64,000 bases of DNA from NCBI RefSeq assembly GCF_003704095.1, contig NW_020846727.1, positions 372,001 to 436,000 of the forward strand, read 5' to 3'. Position 1 is the first letter of the stretch. Every line of letters starts with the position of its first letter. This DNA comes from Pocillopora damicornis (lineage: Eukaryota). Under the pieces are notes generated by a model that was not told the DNA's origin, did not search any database, and saw nothing but the letters and a program-made list of their open reading frames with translations. The position numbers and the translations under genes were made by a program. Shown here one piece after another: positions 5,307 to 38,700 of this stretch.

Positions 5307-5710
5307 ATGATGTTGTTGGAACACACTTTGATTTTGGTGCGTTTGTTGCTGGAATTGACTAAGGTCTTCGTAAATGGCGATCAAGGTAATTTATTTTCGT
5401 CAATGAACCGGGCTGACAGTAGTTAGCCCCAACAGTTCAAACCAAATTTCAATATCTGGAAGAGAAGGGGACCTATATAAATATAACACAACGCGGAAAA
5501 CGCGTAAGCAACTATCCTTTCTGACACCTATTAATTGCTTTTGATTGTCAACTATAATTCGTTGAGTTTTGAGCGACGGCAATTCGGCATAAGTTTTTTA
5601 ATAATAGATGTATCGACCACCCATTTTGCAAAGCATCCTTCCCTGAATTGCGTGTTTTCATTACACAGGTCTTGAACTAACAGGAACTTTGAATGAACAT
5701 TACAATCCAG
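5307..5710 (+). CDS. Putative first coding exons of the giant GPCR (signal-peptide-like MMLLEHTLILVRLLLELTKVFVNG-DQ, then GLELTGTLNEHYNP)
   Basis: Acceptor ttttcag at 5264, ATG at 5307, a hydrophobic stretch and a phase-1 donor G|gtaatt at 5385. A 42-nt phase 1-1 exon at 5669-5710 is phase-compatible with the MAM exon at 7484. Confidence 0.5.
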
Positions 5711-8700
5711 GTTTTGATACCAGAATTTATCTTTTACGTATTTTAAAAATCTTACTCAGCTTTGTTTGGAATACTTATGGACAAGTCTCTGTTTCGTTAC
5801 TGCGATAACGAGGTTGGCCGGGAAAAGGTCCATGTCGCTGAAAAGTTGTATTTAAAATTTAGAACGTTTTGTAATTACTACTTGATTATCCGTTGAAATC
5901 CGTTGAACATGTGAGAAGTTAGGAAGCAAAGGTTGAATTTATATTCTTATTTCTTCGTGATATTGTATCGCGATTTTTTTGGAAAGTTGTCTTTAAACAG
6001 TTTACTGAGTGCGCGTGAGGCAAAGAAGTAGCGGAAATAGCATTTTTTTGTTTGTTTGTTTTCTTAAACAGTTGTGTGATTCAAGGAAAATTACCTCCTG
6101 ACTCGTGAATTCCACATAAAATTGGAATCGAAACACCATTATTGCATCCATCGCTCCTCGATTCGTTCAATATCAGTTTATTCGCGTGAATTTTAATGTG
6201 GAATTCCTTTGTTATTTGGAATAGTTATACATTCCTGCCAGCCTATTGTGGGGAGGCAAAGACCGGATTGAGATGCTGGTGTAGAATGCATCCATCATTT
6301 GTGGGTTGAGAATCATGTGATAATTAACGATACATTCATACATTAGGGTGCGTTCAAGGGGATATGAAGCACGAGGAAAGTTTGGAGAACACAAGAGAAG
6401 CGTAATAGTTGCTCGAGGCGCAGCCAGGAGCAACTCTAGCTTCTTGAGTGCTCAAAAAAGCTACCAAGTGCTTCATATCCCCATGAATGCACAGCCGTCG
6501 TATGAACCAATGGTTTATAATATTGTCAACGCAGTATTTTGGATATTGTTTTCTCGCAATCCGGAAACTTTTGTGAAATACAGCGCGCAATAAATCTAAA
6601 CTATACTGTCTTTTAACCAAAAGAAGCACTAATGAAATAAAACGAGGTCAATAACTTATTCCTAAACTAAAAAAATTATGGTTTTTGACATAATGTATTC
6701 AGAAATCCAAATTTTTGATAAAAATCTCAGAACCAAATAACCGCCTACCGCCTACCAAAGGTAAGGCAAAAAAATAGCGTAGAAATATTTTGAGATTAAG
6801 CTTTAACCAATTATATAACAATTATACCGTTAAGAAGCGAAAAACTCGGATCTTTTCCTTGCGTACATGCGACCGGCGTTGAAGATTCGTTGTTTGCTCG
6901 ACTTCACAGCCAGAAAGTTTCGAAGTGTTGTGTTTAAAATTCGAAAAGTTGTCATATTTAAAACAAATTCTTTTATTGCACAGTACTTCAAGGACATATC
7001 AATACTATTTACCGGGCAGAAGGATGGTCCGAAATTGGCGAAGTTCCACTTTTGCCAGCAAATTCAGTATCCATTTTCCATCCATAATTCGGATCGTGTA
7101 GCTGAGTCACTTTCCAAATCGAGTATCTTTCCTACATTTACTTTTCTCATAGAGCTCCTAAAAGTCTATTTTAATCCGGATGGAACAAGAAAAAACTTCT
7201 TGAAAATCTCAAAACTCGCCGTCAGACTGGTCAAGAAGTTCGCAGTCAATCGCGGAGGAAAATTTCTAATCTCGAGGCATTTGTTTGTGACGTCATTGGG
7301 GTACGCAGTTGGATTATGAAACACGCACACGCTATTGAATTTGGGTACCTGAATTTGCTTGCTATGTTATAATCATCCTTGGGCACCCACAGGTGTTTTT
7401 GGCTCTCTGGCCTTTTTTTGACAAATAGTCTCATCTTGTACTGTTCACTTATTGAGTTTTCTTTGGTCCCTCCCATGACATAGCAAACTGTACATTCGAA
7501 AGGGACCTCTGTGGATGGACTAACGAGAAGCAAAGTGATGATTTAGACTGGATCCGTTATCGAGGATCCTCACCCACAAAGTTAACAGGACCTTCTCGAG
7601 ATTTTTCAGGTCAGATTATGTTCATTACTCCTATTTTGTTACTGTAATAGATAACTGTACTCGAGTGAATGTAATAGATAACTGTACTCGAGTGAATGAA
7701 ATTGGTAAATGTCAAAACCTGTTGAGTTATGTAAAAGATTAGGTATTGAGCGAATGAGACGCTCATACTCGCAGAAAAAGAAGACCTCCGAGTGCTCACA
7801 ATAGCTATCGAACCTTCGACCTTCCAATTAGCCCTCCAGATGCTACGGCCACTCTCTTTGAGCGTATACACTTCAAGAATATACACTTCATAATCTCTTG
7901 GTTTAACAAGGTCCATAGCCATTTTTTGGCCTAGGGTGCTAGGAAAGGAATGTCGAATCTGATGCCTTTGCACAATCTTGATTTAAAAAAGGATGGTACA
8001 TGTTGAGCCAGGTGATTTAAATAAAAGGTGATGTGTTAAATGATTGACACAGGAATACTCGGAGAAAAAAGAGAGCTGTGGGCGTTCCCAATAGGACTCA
8101 AACATTGGATCTTCCGATTAGCCGCCCGGATACCCTTACACAGAGCCTCAGGATACTCTTTGTAGGCTAAGCCGTTTAACCACGTGACAAACGTTCTTCA
8201 TACTGCTAGAATGTCGAATGTGATGCTTTTGTGCAATTATAATGTTTATGAAGATGGTTAACGTTACGCTACGTGATTTAAGTCCATGTTACGTGATTTA
8301 AGTCCATTAAGACATACTTCCCTCATACCCTTATAATAAGAAAGACGAATGCGATACTTTTGCTCAATGAAAAGGAAATTCCCCCCTTACAACAAATTAC
8401 TACGTATAGTACAAGCAGAAGACTACTCAAGTCAGAAAAGAAGGCTCAAATAACATTAGACTGGGACAAAGCAGCTCAAAGCTTTCCAAGCGCAGAAAGG
8501 ACCGAAACTTGGAAACTAGGGAGCCTCGTGAACAAGTTACAAACAAGTAGGGAGATCACTTATGACTGCCACAGCAGAGTGTGGGTAAACAGTTTTCTTG
8601 CCTTTCGAACAGTTCTCGTGGTTTTGAGAAATGAGGACCGCAAAATCAAAGTGAACGCTTTACTCGATGAAGATTCAAAGTAGTAGGCGAACACGGGCTT

Positions 8701-35700: not shown

Positions 35701-38700
35701 ATTCGTTCAAAAAATGCGATCAAAAATGTATGATTGATCGAACGATCTGTGAGAGTGCGCTGTTTCATCAAATCAAACTCGGTGACTTTGGTGTGCACAT
35801 TTCCTCATATCAATTTGATGACCACTCAGTTAAGCGACCACTCTGTAGACAACCTCTCGTTGTCATTTCTGGGGTGACTGCACCACCTTTGTGGTAAAAC
35901 GTTTAACAAACTTCTTAGGGGAAAATTCTCCAGAAAAACCGTACCTCTGGGGAAGCATTTATTTGTATAGCTCAGATGGCTTAATTCCCTCTTAGGAAAA
36001 TTTCCCTTGTGTCGTGCATCTGGGAAGCGACCATGTACGAGATCATGCGAAATACGTGTACAATACATCCGTATTTTTAACTTTTGGCAAAGTAACGTTT
36101 AAGATTCTTAGCAATTTGACCACCAACATATTTTAAAGTTCAAACATATAAGCAGTTCAACCATTAGATATTTTTTCTCATCAGATATCTTCAGGATAAC
36201 TTGATTGAAGTAATTCCGGACAAATTATTCAACAATCTTGGAAACCTAAAAGTTCTGTAAGTATCTTTTAACATTGACATACTTCTCATCTCTCATCTTA
36301 TGAGGATTCTCACTAGTGATGTTGTTAAGTAATGGTAATAGGACTGAGTGGAGTCCAATTCGGTCTGTAATCATACGAGTGCTAACAAAATCGGTCGACC
36401 GCGCAGCAGGAGTCCGATTTGTTTATCACCCGTATCATTACAAACCGAATTGGACGACATATCCTCTCTTTCTCCATTTCTTTGTTCTTCCACATACTTT
36501 CGTATTTAAAAGGGAGTAGCAAATGACCTGATTGTGCATTTATATGCAAGTGTAGTCAAATCTTGAAACTATTTCCATTCTTTGTCTTAGCTACCTGAAC
36601 AACAATAAGATAAAAAGGATATCAATGCACACCTTTGAGGGATTAATGTCATTACACACTCTGTGAGTATATGTGTGTGTACCTTGTCTCTTTCACGCTT
36701 TTGCAAGCTTATTAATACCGTAAGGTTACTCATGAAAGCGTAGAAATGAGAATTGGTGGGATTTAAATAGAACTACCCTCATTGTGACTTTTAAGGCTTT
36801 ACCACGATCACCAACGTTTTTATTTTTTACCTCAATCCGCAGTCTGCGTAAATATCAGGGGGAAAAAACATTTTTGTCATCATGGCTCACTAACCTTTTT
36901 TGCACACGTGAGCCATTCGACTTTGCATTATCTCAAAATATCTAAGAACAGAATGTTTTCGTCGGGATAATTCATCACGTCGGCGATTGACGGTATTCTT
37001 CTCTTGTCATATGATTCAGGTATCTAGACAATAACAGGATAGTGGACCTCCCTGCTGAAACTTTTCATGCTTTGGGCAGTTTACGAAAACTGTAAGTGAT
37101 GTTAAAAAAACACATTTATCCCTCAGTTATATAATCAGAAAACTCAACAAAACTTTGATGACCTTGGCGCATCCTCGCCGATTCAACGGCTTGCGTATAT
37201 TTTACCCACTCCTCGAAGGGTTCATTATTTCCCAAGGAGTAAATAACAGAAGGAGTCCGTTTTATTTTTGTTGGTAGTTTTATGATGAGACCATGTATCG
37301 ATTTTTTCTCATAAGACAGCTCCAGAAGAGAATCACATGATCGCATCAGGGCCGTTCATACGAGAAAAATATCTGTGGCTGACATTAGATGCAAACCCTT
37401 CCGTCTGACCGATACATTTCCACTTTATTTTCCTCTCGCAAAAGGCCCTAGTGACTCTCTCTGGACTCAATTTACTTCCATTCAGCCTTTGAATAACGAA
37501 CGATAATGCAGTCTTCAGAGTCATAAACAAATTTTCTGGCTAATCAAATGAACTTTACTCTGTCACATTTCTAGTTACGTTATATGATAACTAAAAATCG
37601 AGACCAAACAGCTTACAACGATAAATATAACAGTTTTGTGCTGACAGAATGACAAAAATATGCTTCTACTGCCAATGATAACCCCCCAACGTCAGAACGG
37701 CTAGTTTTTATTAATAGGTGATATCATTATGGGGGTAGGTGATATTATTATGGGGGAAGCCTGCAGACTTGCAATGAAGACAAATACTGCTTTCTTTCAG
37801 CACCATGGATCATTTCACCCACTGCTGTTATGCTGTTACTACAATTCCTCAATTACAGTGTGATGCTCCTGCCGATGGTTTCTCAAGCTGTGATGACCTC
37901 ATGAAAAATAAAACTCTCCAGATATTCATATGGATTCTTGGAATCTCAGCATTCGCAGGGAATTTGATTGTGGTTCTTTGGAGATGTTTCTTGAAAGAAG
38001 ATAATCGCGTTCACTCATTCCTGCTAACAAATTTAGCGATATCTGATTTTCTTATGGGGATATACTTATTAATAATCGCCATTAAAGACACTCAGTGGCA
38101 GGGAGTGTATTTCAAACATGACTTATCCTGGAGGACAGGTAAACTGTGTCAGTTCGCCGGCGTGTTATCCATGGTTTCAAGTGAGGTGTCTGTGGCAATG
38201 TTGACAATTATCACAGCCGACCGACTCATATGCATAGTATTTTCATTCAGATTCAGGAAGCTTTCTTTCAAGCGTGCATGTTTTTTGTGCACAGTTGTGT
38301 GGCTCTTAGGAATCACGATATCCACAGTGCCACTGATGGGAATTGATTATTTTAATGACACGAAAAAAGGTGTAGGTTTTTATGGTCGTTCAGCCGTGTG
38401 CCTTCCTCTCCAGTTGTCATCTGACCGACCAGCAGGTTGGGAGTATTCTGTGTCTTTCTTCATCGCCTTTAATTTCGTGGCTTTCATGTTTATGCTTGTT
38501 TCTTACATTGCTATGTTCGTTAAGGCAAAGAAAATTGGCGGAGCCGTCAGATCGACCAACGTTAGAAACGAGACTGCTATGGCGACAAAAATGATGTTCA
38601 TAATCCTCACAGACTTTTTCTGCTGGATACCAGTCATCATAATCGGAATATTATCTTTAACAGGAAGACTGTATGATCCAAAGCAGCTTGTATATGTTTG

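What the first reader, a model, noticed from the sequence alone, without database searches (positions are those of the whole stretch)
5307..37091. Very large mosaic lectin/adhesion ectodomain on one GPCR
Seen: roughly 2,600 aa in the order MAM, unknown, CTL, unknown, PA14-like, unknown, MAM, LDLa x2-3, MAM, MAM, F5/8C x2, WSC-like, MAM/pentraxin, CUB, LRR x8. All are joinable without a stop. Established: CTL, PA14, discoidin, WSC and pentraxin folds all include glycan-binding members, and MAM-LDLa and CUB proteins are typical extracellular-matrix modules. Inference: a pattern-recognition or matrix-sensing receptor, for example for microbes, symbionts or settlement cues, rather than a simple peptide-hormone receptor.
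Basis: partly seen in the sequence, partly recalled or inferred. Interest (0 to 1): 0.8.

Follow-up and report, generated by a model that had tools for sequence, protein, structure and literature searches.

The report
Giant mosaic-ectodomain LGR receptor gene, coral
This is one real, expressed coral gene for a very large relaxin-receptor-like GPCR whose roughly 2,550-residue outer part strings together MAM, lectin-type, LDLa, discoidin, pentraxin, CUB and leucine-rich-repeat modules; the same layout is already predicted in other corals and sea anemones, but nobody has studied what it does.

Summary
On the + strand, 47 exons (5307 to 38854), all flanked by AG/GT, join into one open frame of 2,857 aa, with TM1 near residue 2,548.

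- **Domains.** Pfam confirms, exon by exon, five MAM (three score above Pfam's cut-off), C-type lectin, two LDLa plus one degenerate, two F5/8C, CUB, seven of eight LRR exons and a rhodopsin-type 7TM. PA14, WSC and pentraxin score below threshold. Three modules stay unassigned.
- **Assembly gap.** The gap (10716-10815) lies in a 5.5-kb intron beside a retroelement-like frame. It interrupts no coding sequence that can be seen.
- **RNA.** Contigs from four independent studies splice MAM5 to CUB, a linker exon, LRRNT, eight 72-nt LRR exons and the 7TM exon. This refutes a break before CUB-LRR-7TM.
- **Upstream continuity.** It rests on frame-consistent splicing and on a fully collinear 3,185-aa Montipora protein, plus similar single-protein models in Nematostella, Actinia, Oculina and Stylophora.
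- **Beyond the finding.** The gene continues to about 44,976 with a kinase-like, probably inactive, cytoplasmic tail.
- **Class.** Hinge and 7TM are closest to relaxin receptor RXFP1 (type C, GRL101-like LGR), but CUB, not LDLa, adjoins the LRRs.

The pattern-recognition reading is untested, and the C-type lectin module lacks the EPN/QPD sugar-binding motif.

Verdict: a new variant of a known kind, of moderate interest.

The parts
5307..5385 (+). Candidate first coding exon (ATG, weak signal-peptide-like stretch, phase-1 donor)
   Evidence: Only ATG/hydrophobic/donor candidate with the phase needed by the acceptor at 7484. No RNA or relative support. Predicted only.
7484..7609 (+). MAM1 N-terminal exon
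   Evidence: Pfam MAM E 8.5e-7, profile positions 1-38. Collinear with P0003 and P0327.
10716..10815 (.). Assembly gap inside intron 7610-13136, next to a retroelement-like open frame (10577-11356)
   Evidence: The MAM profile and the Montipora protein residues are continuous across the flanking exons. Not filled.
13137..13393 (+). MAM1 middle exon
   Evidence: Pfam MAM E 1.9e-15, profile positions 41-132.
14366..14453 (+). MAM1 C-terminal exon
   Evidence: Local tblastn to P0161 and P0163, E 3e-6 and 2e-7. Frame fits.
14851..15231 (+). Unassigned 127-aa module in a single phase 1-1 exon
   Evidence: No Pfam hit. Conserved in P0003, P0161 and P0327 (56% to P0327) and in 3 paralogues in the same genome. 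Atlas search gave noise.
15680..16093 (+). C-type lectin-like domain exon
   Evidence: Pfam Lectin_C E 2.2e-10. No EPN/QPD motif.
16648..16875 (+). Unassigned module
   Evidence: No Pfam hit. Collinear with P0327 residues 514-612.
17757..18739 (+). PA14-like domain in three exons (17757-17947, 18307-18485, 18564-18739)
   Evidence: Pfam PA14 E 0.067 here and E 0.0075 over residues 610-755 of P0327. The 78-nt intron matches gaps in four relatives.
19307..20120 (+). Cys-rich unassigned module in two exons (19307-19482, 20048-20120)
   Evidence: Conserved in P0163, P0164 and P0327. The second exon matches P0327 residues 873-896 at 46%.
20270..20888 (+). MAM2 in three exons (20270-20338, 20432-20682, 20780-20888)
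   Evidence: Pfam MAM E 2.9e-5 and 0.003. Alignment to P0327.
21167..21782 (+). LDLa modules: two canonical (21167-21388) and one degenerate (21660-21782)
   Evidence: Pfam Ldl_recept_a E 7.6e-19 in two stretches, and E 0.0014.
22175..22888 (+). MAM3 in three exons (22175-22312, 22389-22639, 22789-22888)
   Evidence: Pfam MAM E 2.2e-6, 1.2e-20 and 0.014.
23242..24812 (+). MAM4 in three exons (23242-23328, 24065-24306, 24713-24812)
   Evidence: Pfam MAM E 8.7e-9 for the middle exon. N exon matched by alignment to relatives. C exon placed by splice phase and its IDIDDV..C motif; its open frame had no Pfam hit.
25163..26355 (+). F5/8 type C (discoidin) domain 1 in two exons
   Evidence: Pfam F5_F8_type_C E 2.8e-11 and 0.01. 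P0327 identity 65-84%.
26453..28093 (+). F5/8 type C domain 2 in three exons (26453-26649, 27112-27240, 27952-28093)
   Evidence: Pfam E 4.7e-7 and 2.9e-4. P0327 identity 60-77%.
28645..28950 (+). WSC-like exon
   Evidence: Pfam WSC E 0.0032, 18 bits, below cut-off. 57% identical to P0327 residues 1738-1853.
29368..29508 (+). MAM5 N-terminal exon (assigned by motif only)
   Evidence: C..S....C.W motif as in the other MAM N exons. No Pfam MAM hit. Phase 1-1.
29597..31003 (+). Pentraxin/LamG-like cassette in three exons (29597-29834, 30241-30383, 30767-31003)
   Evidence: Pfam Pentaxin E 4e-4 twice here and E 1e-10 in P0327.
31587..32495 (+). MAM5 middle (31587-31837) and C-terminal (32387-32495) exons
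   Evidence: Pfam MAM E 5.2e-6. The junction 31837 to 32387 is supported by the RNA loose-end sequence at 32382 seen in X4 and X5, and 32495 to 32793 by joints in 4 runs.
32793..33134 (+). CUB domain exon
   Evidence: Pfam CUB E 2.6e-29. RNA joints on both sides.
33395..33430 (+). 36-nt linker exon
   Evidence: RNA joints 33132/33393 and 33428/33638 in 4 runs.
33640..33748 (+). LRR N-terminal cap exon (CPSGCSC)
   Evidence: RNA joints. 54% identical to P0327 residues 2326-2364. No Pfam hit.
33912..37091 (+). Eight 72-nt LRR exons (33912-33983, 34277-34348, 34694-34765, 35100-35171, 35503-35574, 36185-36256, 36591-36662, 37020-37091)
   Evidence: All junctions are GT..AG in RNA contigs of three to four runs. 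7 of 8 hit Pfam LRR_8, E 5e-4 to 0.03.
37801..38837 (+). Hinge plus seven-transmembrane exon, up to the only GT donor before the in-frame stop at 38852
   Evidence: Pfam 7tm_1 E 6.3e-30. RXFP1 (7tmw) E 1.2e-54, with the hinge included in the alignment. RNA joint 37091/37801. Donor identified.
39552..44976 (+). Cytoplasmic tail exons, approximate (39552-39668, 43228-43473, 43751-43948, 44642-44770, 44884-44976), including a kinase-like domain
   Evidence: Collinear with P0327 residues 2906-3178. Pfam Pkinase E 3.6e-6 for 43751-43948. Frame-compatible chains give about 3,150 aa. Splice sites not fixed, and no RNA laid here.

Best explanation
**What it is.** A single gene of about 40 kb and at least 52 exons, in a coral (the runs that hold it carry coral labels). 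It encodes a receptor of about 3,150 residues.

- **Outside the cell:** a probable signal peptide, then about 2,520 residues in this order: MAM; unknown module; C-type lectin-like; unknown; PA14-like; Cys-rich unknown; MAM; LDLa x2 plus one degenerate; MAM; MAM; discoidin x2; WSC-like; a fifth MAM with a pentraxin-like cassette inserted; CUB; a 12-residue linker; LRR cap plus eight LRRs; and a relaxin-receptor-type hinge.
- **In the membrane:** a rhodopsin-class 7TM with intact activation motifs.
- **Inside the cell:** a kinase-like domain that has lost the catalytic HRD and DFG aspartates.

It belongs to an expanded anthozoan family within the type C (relaxin receptor / GRL101-like) LGRs.

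**How it most likely works (inferred).** Extracellular partners engage the LRR arc and/or the distal modules. The change passes through the CUB-linker-LRR-hinge unit to the 7TM bundle, in the way the N-terminal module and hinge drive RXFP1. That activates a heterotrimeric G protein. The dead kinase domain would act as a docking scaffold.

**Shown:** gene structure, expression, domain content and family membership. **Inferred:** the ligand class, the coupling and the role of the tail.
For: **One ORF.** 47 exons with AG/GT borders and consistent phases.

**RNA.** One spliced contig per run in X1, X4 and X5 (three separate studies); in X11, a fourth study, the same exons are covered by several shorter contigs. 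Together they join 31837>32387, 32495>32793, 33134>33395, 33430>33640, all eight LRR exons, and 37091>37801. The X5 contig runs 2,070 nt further 5' and the X4 contig 3,634 nt further 3'. RNA runs hold 0.21-0.30 of the sampled words of 29300-38900. From the exon lengths I estimate about 0.28 if all modelled exons are transcribed.

**Relatives.**
- The Montipora capricornis protein P0327 (3,185 aa) gives 40 collinear matches from 7378 to 44770 at 40-84% identity. It confirms the one doubtful exon.
- The Nematostella, Actinia, Oculina and Stylophora models are also collinear.

**Domains.**

**7TM and hinge.** The best solved match is RXFP1, and the alignment starts in the hinge. Read directly from the translation: D in TM2 (LAISD), DRL, CWIP and NPLLY.

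**Tail.** Pkinase E 3.6e-6. CHNN and GNFG stand in place of HRD and DFG.

**Paralogues.** At least 8 in the same genome. Three have the same unknown N-terminal module 24-29 kb upstream of their 7TM exon.
Against: - No RNA was laid on 5307-31586 or on 38300-44976, so continuity there rests on predicted models from other species, which could share one annotation error.
- The content of the 2,070-nt upstream extension of the X5 contig was not seen.
- The first exon and its signal peptide are weak.
- An Oculina isoform that starts at the LDLa modules (P0324) suggests shorter transcripts may exist.
- No ligand, G-protein coupling or binding activity is known for any member.
- PA14 and WSC are below Pfam's cut-offs.
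- The lectin module lacks the canonical sugar site.
Confidence: 0.62

Rival explanations
1. There are two or more adjacent genes: a secreted or separately anchored MAM/lectin protein in the 5' part, and a shorter CUB-LRR-7TM receptor. They would only appear joinable because the exon phases happen to match.
For: No reads were laid upstream of 31587. An Oculina isoform begins at the LDLa modules (P0324). Phase 1-1 module exons can be joined by chance.
Against: RNA contigs already place MAM5-mid and MAM5-C on the 7TM mRNA, and one contig extends 2,070 nt further 5'. Introns are short (76-972 nt from 13.4 to 37.8 kb), with no intergenic-sized space. No stop codon or terminal exon was found. Single-protein models cover the same order in at least five species. 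In three paralogues in the same genome, the N-terminal module lies upstream of a 7TM exon at the same distance and on the same strand.
Confidence: 0.07
2. It is essentially a protein-hormone receptor of the relaxin/insulin-like (type C) kind. The ligand binds the LRR arc, and the long N-terminal chain only tunes, tethers or clusters the receptor.
For: Hinge and 7TM are most like RXFP1. There are 8 LRRs, as in type A and C LGRs (PMC9545775). GRL101-type receptors are proposed receptors for insulin-like peptides (PMC8286064, PMC6267866).
Against: The LDLa module that adjoins the LRRs in type C receptors is replaced by CUB. About 2,250 residues of conserved extra modules are kept across anthozoans. 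The family is expanded to at least 8 paralogues with varying cassettes, which is unusual for a hormone receptor. GRL101 itself is still an orphan (PMC11863921).
Confidence: 0.25
3. One reading: a pattern-recognition or matrix/settlement-cue sensor. Several glycan-binding folds capture microbial, symbiont or matrix glycoconjugates and report directly through a GPCR.
For: The ectodomain holds CTLD, PA14-like, discoidin, WSC-like and pentraxin-like modules. The family is expanded and its middle cassettes are shuffled between paralogues and species, as is often seen in recognition receptors. It is expressed in polyA RNA labelled coral or marine metagenome.
Against: No binding data exist. The CTLD lacks EPN/QPD. 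Three of the five 'lectin' assignments are sub-threshold. MAM, LDLa and CUB are general protein-interaction modules. Nothing is known about cell type or stage.
Confidence: 0.25
4. It is a decaying or non-functional gene copy in an expanded family.
For: There are many paralogues. The third LDLa, the CTLD sugar site and the kinase are degenerate.
Against: The 2,857-codon frame is intact across 47 exons. It is correctly spliced and present in polyA RNA from four studies. The 7TM motifs are intact, and the degenerate kinase residues are shared with the Montipora protein.
Confidence: 0.03

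Closest known systems
Predicted anthozoan proteins of the same layout: Montipora capricornis 'uncharacterized protein isoform X2' (P0327, 3,185 aa), Nematostella LOC5517652 (XP_048584250.1, 3,282 aa), Actinia LOC116297509, Oculina LOC144655983 / LOC144653157, Stylophora 'G-protein coupled receptor GRL101'
   Same: The module order is the same from MAM1 to CUB-LRR-7TM-kinase-like tail. P0327 matches every modelled exon except the first (signal peptide), the MAM3, MAM4 and MAM5 N-terminal exons, the MAM4 C-terminal exon, the 36-nt linker and most of the short LRR exons, at 40-84% identity.
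   Different: The middle cassette varies. Pfam finds LamG and fn2 where the window has two discoidins and a WSC-like module in the Nematostella protein P0003, and up to six discoidins in Stylophora. All of these are computer-predicted and none has been studied.
GRL101 of Lymnaea stagnalis and bilaterian type C2 LGRs (orphan)
   Same: A rhodopsin-class 7TM of the LGR branch, an LRR array, LDLa modules in the ectodomain, and NCBI naming of relatives as GRL101 (PMC8286064, PMC11863921).
   Different: GRL101 has twelve LDLa repeats plus six LRRs and nothing else (PMC8286064). Here only 2-3 LDLa lie about 1,270 residues from the LRRs, CUB adjoins the LRRs, there are about 2,000 residues of other modules, and there is a kinase-like tail. 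Placement in a tree was not tested.
Relaxin receptors RXFP1/RXFP2 (type C1 LGR; structure 7TMW)
   Same: The best solved match (189 bits). The alignment covers the hinge (DGFSS.DDL), ECL2 (YG..VC.PL) and all helices. The LRR number is similar.
   Different: RXFP1 has a single LDLa module at its N-terminus (PMC9545775); from my own knowledge it is needed for activation. Here a CUB domain and a 12-residue linker take that place, and the ectodomain is about six times longer.
Nvec-LGR4 (A7SU96), drawn in the Cnidaria/Placozoa review (PMC9545775)
   Same: A cnidarian type C-like LGR with an LDL domain plus extra CUB and fibronectin type II domains. It is the only published mention I found of extra modules on a cnidarian LGR.
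   Different: The paper does not mention lectin or kinase domains (zero occurrences; every 'MAM' passage shown was the word 'mammal'), and PA14, pentraxin and discoidin were not searched for. Whether A7SU96 is a fragment of one of the giant genes was not checked.
Giant mosaic LGRs of ambulacrarians, molluscs, nemerteans and spiders (for example Saccoglossus LOC102803992, Anneissia LOC117120284, Mizuhopecten 'GRL101')
   Same: Proteins of 2,000-2,900 aa with CUB, discoidin, C-type lectin, EGF or kringle modules ahead of LDLa-LRR-7TM.
   Different: In the two scanned (Saccoglossus, Anneissia) the LDLa repeats lie close to the LRRs; MAM/pentraxin are listed for few of them (nemertean proteins carry MAM) and a kinase family for only one (P0333, Saccoglossus); 7TM identity to the window is 45-49% for the few listed.
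Adhesion GPCRs (class B2) and MALRD1-type MAM-LDLa proteins
   Same: A long chain of adhesion-type modules on a 7TM receptor, and MAM-LDLa alternation.
   Different: The 7TM is 7tm_1, not secretin-like. No GAIN/GPS hit appeared in any Pfam scan. MALRD1-type proteins have no 7TM.

Membership tests
LGR (leucine-rich-repeat-containing rhodopsin-class GPCR) | Rhodopsin-family seven-transmembrane domain | tested here: met
   Pfam 7tm_1 E 6.3e-30. LAISD, DRL, CWIP and NPLLY are read in the translation.
LGR (leucine-rich-repeat-containing rhodopsin-class GPCR) | Array of LRRs with a Cys-rich cap directly N-terminal of a Cys-rich hinge and the 7TM, on the same mRNA | tested here: met
   RNA contigs join LRRNT, eight 72-nt LRR exons and the 7TM exon. 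7 of 8 exons hit LRR_8. The CPSGCSC cap and the CC...C...C hinge are visible.
Type C LGR (relaxin receptor / GRL101 branch) | Hinge and 7TM most similar to relaxin-type receptors | tested here: met
   RXFP1 189 bits against TSHR 137 and LGR4 56. The alignment begins in the hinge. No tree was built.
Type C LGR (relaxin receptor / GRL101 branch) | LDLa module(s) immediately N-terminal of the LRR region | tested here: not met
   CUB (32793-33134) and a 12-residue linker precede LRRNT. The LDLa exons lie at 21167-21782, about 1,270 residues upstream.
Type C LGR (relaxin receptor / GRL101 branch) | About 7-9 LRRs (per PMC9545775) | tested here: met
   Eight LRR exons plus caps.
GRL101 (type C2) | Ectodomain made of many LDLa repeats plus LRRs (twelve LDLa in Lymnaea, PMC8286064) | tested here: not met
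   Two canonical and one degenerate LDLa only; most of the ectodomain is made of other modules.
GRL101 (type C2) | Falls inside the bilaterian GRL101 clade in a 7TM tree | not tested
   No reference RXFP or Lymnaea GRL101 sequences were available as tool-provided sequences. An earlier study found cnidarian 'GRL101-type' receptors poorly supported in this position (PMC4079206).
Anthozoan giant MAM-...-CUB-LRR-7TM-kinase-like receptors (database-only family) | Collinear module order over the whole length | tested here: met
   40 collinear tblastn matches to P0327, and also to P0003, P0161, P0163 and P0164.
Anthozoan giant MAM-...-CUB-LRR-7TM-kinase-like receptors (database-only family) | Cytoplasmic kinase-like domain after the 7TM | tested here: met
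   Exon 43751-43948 hits Pkinase at E 3.6e-6. The tail is collinear with P0327 residues 2906-3178. Splicing from 38837 is inferred, not seen in RNA.
Adhesion GPCR (class B2) | Secretin-like 7TM (7tm_2) preceded by a GAIN/GPS autoproteolysis domain | tested here: not met
   Only 7tm_1 was found. No GPS/GAIN hit in the window's exons or in six scanned relatives.
Calcium-dependent carbohydrate-binding C-type lectin | CTLD fold | tested here: met
   Pfam Lectin_C E 2.2e-10, profile positions 2-106 of 107.
Calcium-dependent carbohydrate-binding C-type lectin | EPN or QPD tripeptide with a downstream WND at the sugar/Ca site (PMC5379193 for EPN/QPD) | tested here: not met
   No EPN, QPD, EPS, EPD or QPN is present. 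The site reads GYPLNG and LLNTDC. The only WND lies in the mid-domain WIWNDG strand.
Pattern-recognition receptor | Demonstrated binding of microbial or non-self molecules that triggers a response | not testable with these tools
   Needs binding and signalling assays.

The most novel reading that the evidence does not exclude
Anthozoans carry an expanded, fast-shuffling family of giant LGR-pseudokinase receptors. In these, multivalent capture of glycoconjugates from microbes, symbionts or substrata by the distal lectin-type modules would be converted directly into G-protein signalling by a relaxin-receptor-type core. The CUB domain would take over the tethered-activator role of the LDLa module, and the dead kinase would recruit a second pathway. 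That would be a pattern-recognition route not described in any animal.
Probability: 0.15. Interest if true: 0.85.

Novelty: new variant of a known kind. Interest (0 to 1): 0.55.

Why it matters
LGRs are textbook hormone and R-spondin receptors with modest ectodomains. Here a relaxin-receptor-type core carries about 2,250 extra residues of adhesion and lectin-type modules and a dead kinase.

- The layout is conserved across sea anemones and both main stony-coral lineages.
- It is multiplied to at least eight paralogues per genome, with exchangeable middle cassettes.

The family exists only as 'uncharacterized protein' or 'GRL101' entries. The papers I could search do not describe it.

If its ligands are environmental or microbial, corals would have a direct lectin-to-G-protein sensing route, relevant to symbiosis, disease and settlement. 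If they are endogenous proteins, it would widen what type C LGRs can recognise and how their N-terminal modules activate them.

The regular exon phases also make it a clear case of receptor building by exon shuffling. Each MAM is split N 1-1, mid 1-0, C 0-1, and the pentraxin cassette sits in a phase-1 intron.

Tried and rejected
1. **Exact-match scans of JGI metagenome contigs** for two predicted exon-exon junctions, 20888/21167 and 7609/13137: 0 hits each. That collection probably holds no transcripts of this coral, so this says nothing.
2. **ESM Atlas.**
   - On the unassigned 126-aa exon: only bacterial AAA-ATPase clusters with a low recognition score, treated as noise.
3. **Structure prediction of the unassigned module.** The alignment of the exon with whole relatives scattered the exon's last third over 4,600 columns (A1). 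Only three paralogous exons were found in the same genome. I dropped the prediction rather than fold from a bad or shallow alignment.
4. **Word searches meant to catch long ORFs from this coral's own RNA contigs**. They returned only 349-aa genomic-style ORFs (98-99% identical) and other species' models, giving no transcript-derived protein for the 5' half.
5. **Signal peptide directly upstream of 7484.** The tblastn extension to 7378 runs through two stop codons and is spurious.
6. **Single exon 18307-18739.** Rejected in favour of a 78-nt intron, because four relatives have a 24-26-residue gap exactly there.
7. **Acceptor 20234.** Replaced by 20270 after comparison with the Montipora protein.
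8. **Adhesion-GPCR and pseudogene readings.** Considered and rejected; see the membership test and the rival explanations.

The joined (spliced) protein model was built only inside the script sandbox, to check frames. It was not sent to any search or folding tool. All searches used single exons by reference, or database proteins.

Full report
**What the window is.** The window has 37.5% G+C and three runs of N, at 1617-1716, 10716-10815 and 63038-63047. Stop-to-stop frames on the + strand between 7.4 and 38.9 kb show a dense row of short coding pieces with extracellular-module motifs. Sequencing runs that hold the stretch are labelled coral or marine metagenome, and the DNA holders are coded organisms. 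The closest proteins are anthozoan. The genome is therefore a coral.

**Checking the observation, exon by exon.** Each open piece was scanned against Pfam by reference.
- Clear hits:
  - MAM, up to E 1.2e-20.
  - Lectin_C, E 2.2e-10.
  - Ldl_recept_a, E 7.6e-19 for two repeats; the third scores only E 0.0014.
  - F5_F8_type_C, E 2.8e-11 and 4.7e-7.
  - CUB, E 2.6e-29.
  - 7tm_1, E 6.3e-30.
- Seven of the eight 23-residue LRR exons hit LRR_8, at E 5e-4 to 0.03.
- Below Pfam's cut-offs: PA14 (E 0.067), WSC (E 0.0032) and pentraxin (E 4e-4, twice).
- PA14 gains some weight from the Montipora protein, where the match covers 146 residues at E 0.0075. The motif pattern is also shared by four relatives.
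- Pentraxin is significant in relatives (E 1e-10).
- WSC is significant only elsewhere, in a Stylophora relative.
- Three modules have no family: 14851-15231, 16648-16875, and 19307-19482 plus 20048-20120.

**Gene model.** I used splice-site scores, frame bookkeeping and local alignments to relatives.
- The result is 47 exons from 5307 to 38854. Every exon is flanked by AG and GT, and they give one ORF of 2,857 codons.
- Between 13.4 and 37.8 kb the introns measure 76-972 nt. The two 5' introns are larger, at 2,098 and 5,527 nt.
- All five MAM domains are split the same way: N exon phase 1-1, middle exon 1-0, C exon 0-1.
- The pentraxin-like cassette is three exons that together are phase 1-1. 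It sits in the phase-1 intron between the N and middle exons of the fifth MAM.
- The joined model stayed inside the sandbox and was not submitted to any search or fold.

**The assembly gap.**
- The gap at 10716-10815 lies in the 5,527-nt intron between 7609 and 13137.
- It sits next to an open frame whose right half reads like the C-terminus of a retroelement integrase (no Pfam hit).
- The flanking exons carry MAM profile positions 1-38 and 41-132.
- They also match adjoining (slightly overlapping) residues of the Nematostella and Montipora proteins, and both are phase 1.
- Nothing coding is therefore expected in the gap. Whether the scaffold join is physically right was not tested. The gap was neither filled nor looked up.

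**RNA evidence.**
- Twelve runs on record as RNA hold 0.21-0.30 of the sampled words of 29300-38900. From the exon lengths I estimate about 0.28 if all modelled exons there are transcribed.
- Contigs of four runs from four studies were laid on 32300-38299.
- In X1, X4 and X5 one contig per run carries these exons: 32382/7-32495, 32793-33134, 33395-33430, 33640-33748, the eight 72-nt exons, and 37801 onward. In X11 several shorter contigs cover them. Joints are GT..AG; two LRR joints are absent from X11.
- The unaligned sequence before 32382 equals the end of exon 31587-31837 apart from one C/T difference. The middle exon of the fifth MAM is therefore on the same mRNA.
- The X5 contig (5,521 nt) continues 2,070 nt further 5'. 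If collinear with the model, that reaches the first discoidin exon. I could not see its letters.
- The X4 contig continues 3,634 nt beyond 38299.

**Relatives.**
- A full HMMER search with the 7TM exon found 1,385 proteins at E below 1e-30. Many of the best are 2,000-3,300 aa long with the 7TM near the C-terminus.
- The longest close one is Nematostella XP_048584250.1, 3,282 aa. Pfam finds five MAM, two CTLD, discoidin, three LDLa, LamG, fn2, pentraxin, CUB, LRR, 7tm_1 and a weak kinase match. It is collinear with the window from 7471 to 43933.
- Word searches added Actinia, Oculina, Stylophora ('G-protein coupled receptor GRL101'), Porites, Acropora and Montipora models.
- The Montipora capricornis protein P0327 (3,185 aa) is the best match. 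It gives 40 collinear matches at 40-84% identity. These cover every modelled exon except the first (signal peptide), the N-terminal exons of MAM3, MAM4 and MAM5, the C-terminal exon of MAM4, the 36-nt linker and most of the short LRR exons.
- P0327 also confirms the small exon 20048-20120, which I had found by frame logic alone.
- The middle cassette varies. The window and Montipora have two discoidins plus a WSC-like module. Nematostella P0003 has LamG and fn2 there. One Stylophora protein has six discoidins.
- Outside Cnidaria, giant LGRs with CUB, discoidin, CTLD, EGF, kringle and LDLa modules occur in hemichordates, echinoderms, molluscs, nemerteans, a brachiopod and spiders.
- In this genome at least eight further 7TM exons are 50-62% identical, four of them on one contig.
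- In three paralogues the unassigned N-terminal module lies 24-29 kb upstream of the 7TM exon on the same strand, as it does here.

**The receptor core.**
- Among solved structures the 7TM exon matches RXFP1 best (E 1.2e-54, 189 bits). TSH, LH and FSH receptors follow at 137-117 bits, and LGR4 at 56.
- The alignment starts in the hinge (DGFSSCDDLM against DGISSLENLL) and keeps the ECL2 motif YG..VC.PL.
- The activation motifs are intact in the translation: D in TM2, DRL, CWIP and NPLLY.
- By hinge, 7TM and LRR number it is a type C LGR.
- The type C hallmark of an LDLa module next to the LRRs is not met. A CUB domain and a 12-residue linker exon take that place, and the LDLa modules lie about 1,270 residues upstream.

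**The 3' end.**
- Proteins from related corals, called on genomic contigs, agree with the window up to ...HS(S/A)G and diverge right after it. That point is the only GT donor before the stop, 38837, CAG|GTGAGG.
- Downstream pieces at 39552-39668, 43228-43473, 43751-43948, 44642-44770 and 44884-44976 are collinear with residues 2906-3178 of the Montipora protein.
- 43751-43948 hits Pkinase at E 3.6e-6. HKTGICHNN and GNFG stand where active kinases have HRD and DFG.
- Frame-compatible chains give about 3,150 aa.
- This agrees with two other first-stage notes on this window. No RNA was laid there.

**Function.**
- Nothing is known experimentally for any member.
- The literature I could search treats GRL101-type (type C2) LGRs as orphans, possibly receptors for insulin-like peptides (PMC11863921, PMC8286064, PMC6267866, PMC4079206).
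- One review draws a Nematostella type C LGR with extra CUB and fn2 domains (PMC9545775).
- None of the papers I opened describes MAM, PA14, pentraxin or discoidin chains, or a kinase tail, on an LGR.
- My best mechanistic reading is as follows. Ligand capture by the LRRs and/or distal modules is relayed through CUB-linker-LRR-hinge to an RXFP1-like 7TM. The result is G-protein activation, with the dead kinase acting as a scaffold.
- I hold the gene structure and family assignment at about 0.9. I hold the signalling mechanism at about 0.4. The ligand class is open: roughly 0.25 endogenous protein hormone, 0.25 glycan or microbe or matrix, and the rest mixed or other.

**Verdict.** It is a member of a conserved, expanded, database-only anthozoan family, and a strongly elaborated variant of type C / GRL101-like LGRs. 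Novelty: new variant of a known kind. Interest: 0.55.

Noticed in passing
window 38837-44976: The receptor most likely continues past the 7TM exon. The only GT donor before the stop is at 38837. Five downstream pieces are collinear with the Montipora protein's tail and include a kinase-like domain (Pkinase E 3.6e-6), with CHNN and GNFG in place of HRD and DFG. A rhodopsin-class GPCR fused to a pseudokinase appears to be conserved in this anthozoan family.
   Followed up: partly
window 29368-32495: A pentraxin/LamG-like cassette of three exons (together phase 1-1) sits in the phase-1 intron between the N-terminal and middle exons of the fifth MAM domain. All five MAM domains share the same exon phases (N 1-1, mid 1-0, C 0-1), and the relatives have the same order of pentraxin then MAM middle part.
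   Followed up: partly
window 10577-11356: An open frame on the + strand is interrupted by the assembly gap. Its right half reads like the C-terminal part of a retroelement integrase (no Pfam hit). It lies inside the 5.5-kb intron of the receptor gene.
   Followed up: partly
window 36300-36499: An intronic stretch has RNA-contig depth of 258-831, against 2-15 in bins holding single LRR exons, and dozens of loose ends on both sides. It is most likely a dispersed repeat transcribed from many places in the genome.
   Followed up: no
window 36592-37382: One low-depth contig (X5, depth 2.9) skips 789 nt with CT..AC ends, which is a GT..AG intron on the minus strand. This may be an antisense spliced transcript inside the receptor gene.
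   Followed up: no
window 41280-42200: Several + strand open frames read like fragments of a non-LTR retrotransposon (endonuclease / reverse-transcriptase-like text). They lie in the large intron between 39668 and 43228. Two pieces gave no Pfam hit.
   Followed up: partly
G000 contigs C4228 (243-521 kb), C2971, C4130, C2596, C1619: At least eight paralogous single-exon hinge-7TM units are 50-62% identical to the window's, four of them on one contig. Three have the same unassigned N-terminal module 24-29 kb upstream. This is a multigene family of giant receptors in this genome.
   Followed up: partly
window 14851-15231; 16648-16875; 19307-19482 plus 20048-20120: Three conserved extracellular modules match no Pfam family. 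The first is a single phase 1-1 exon of 127 residues with invariant Cys, Trp and Pro positions across the ten sequences aligned (nine relatives plus the window's exon). These may be undescribed domains.
   Followed up: partly
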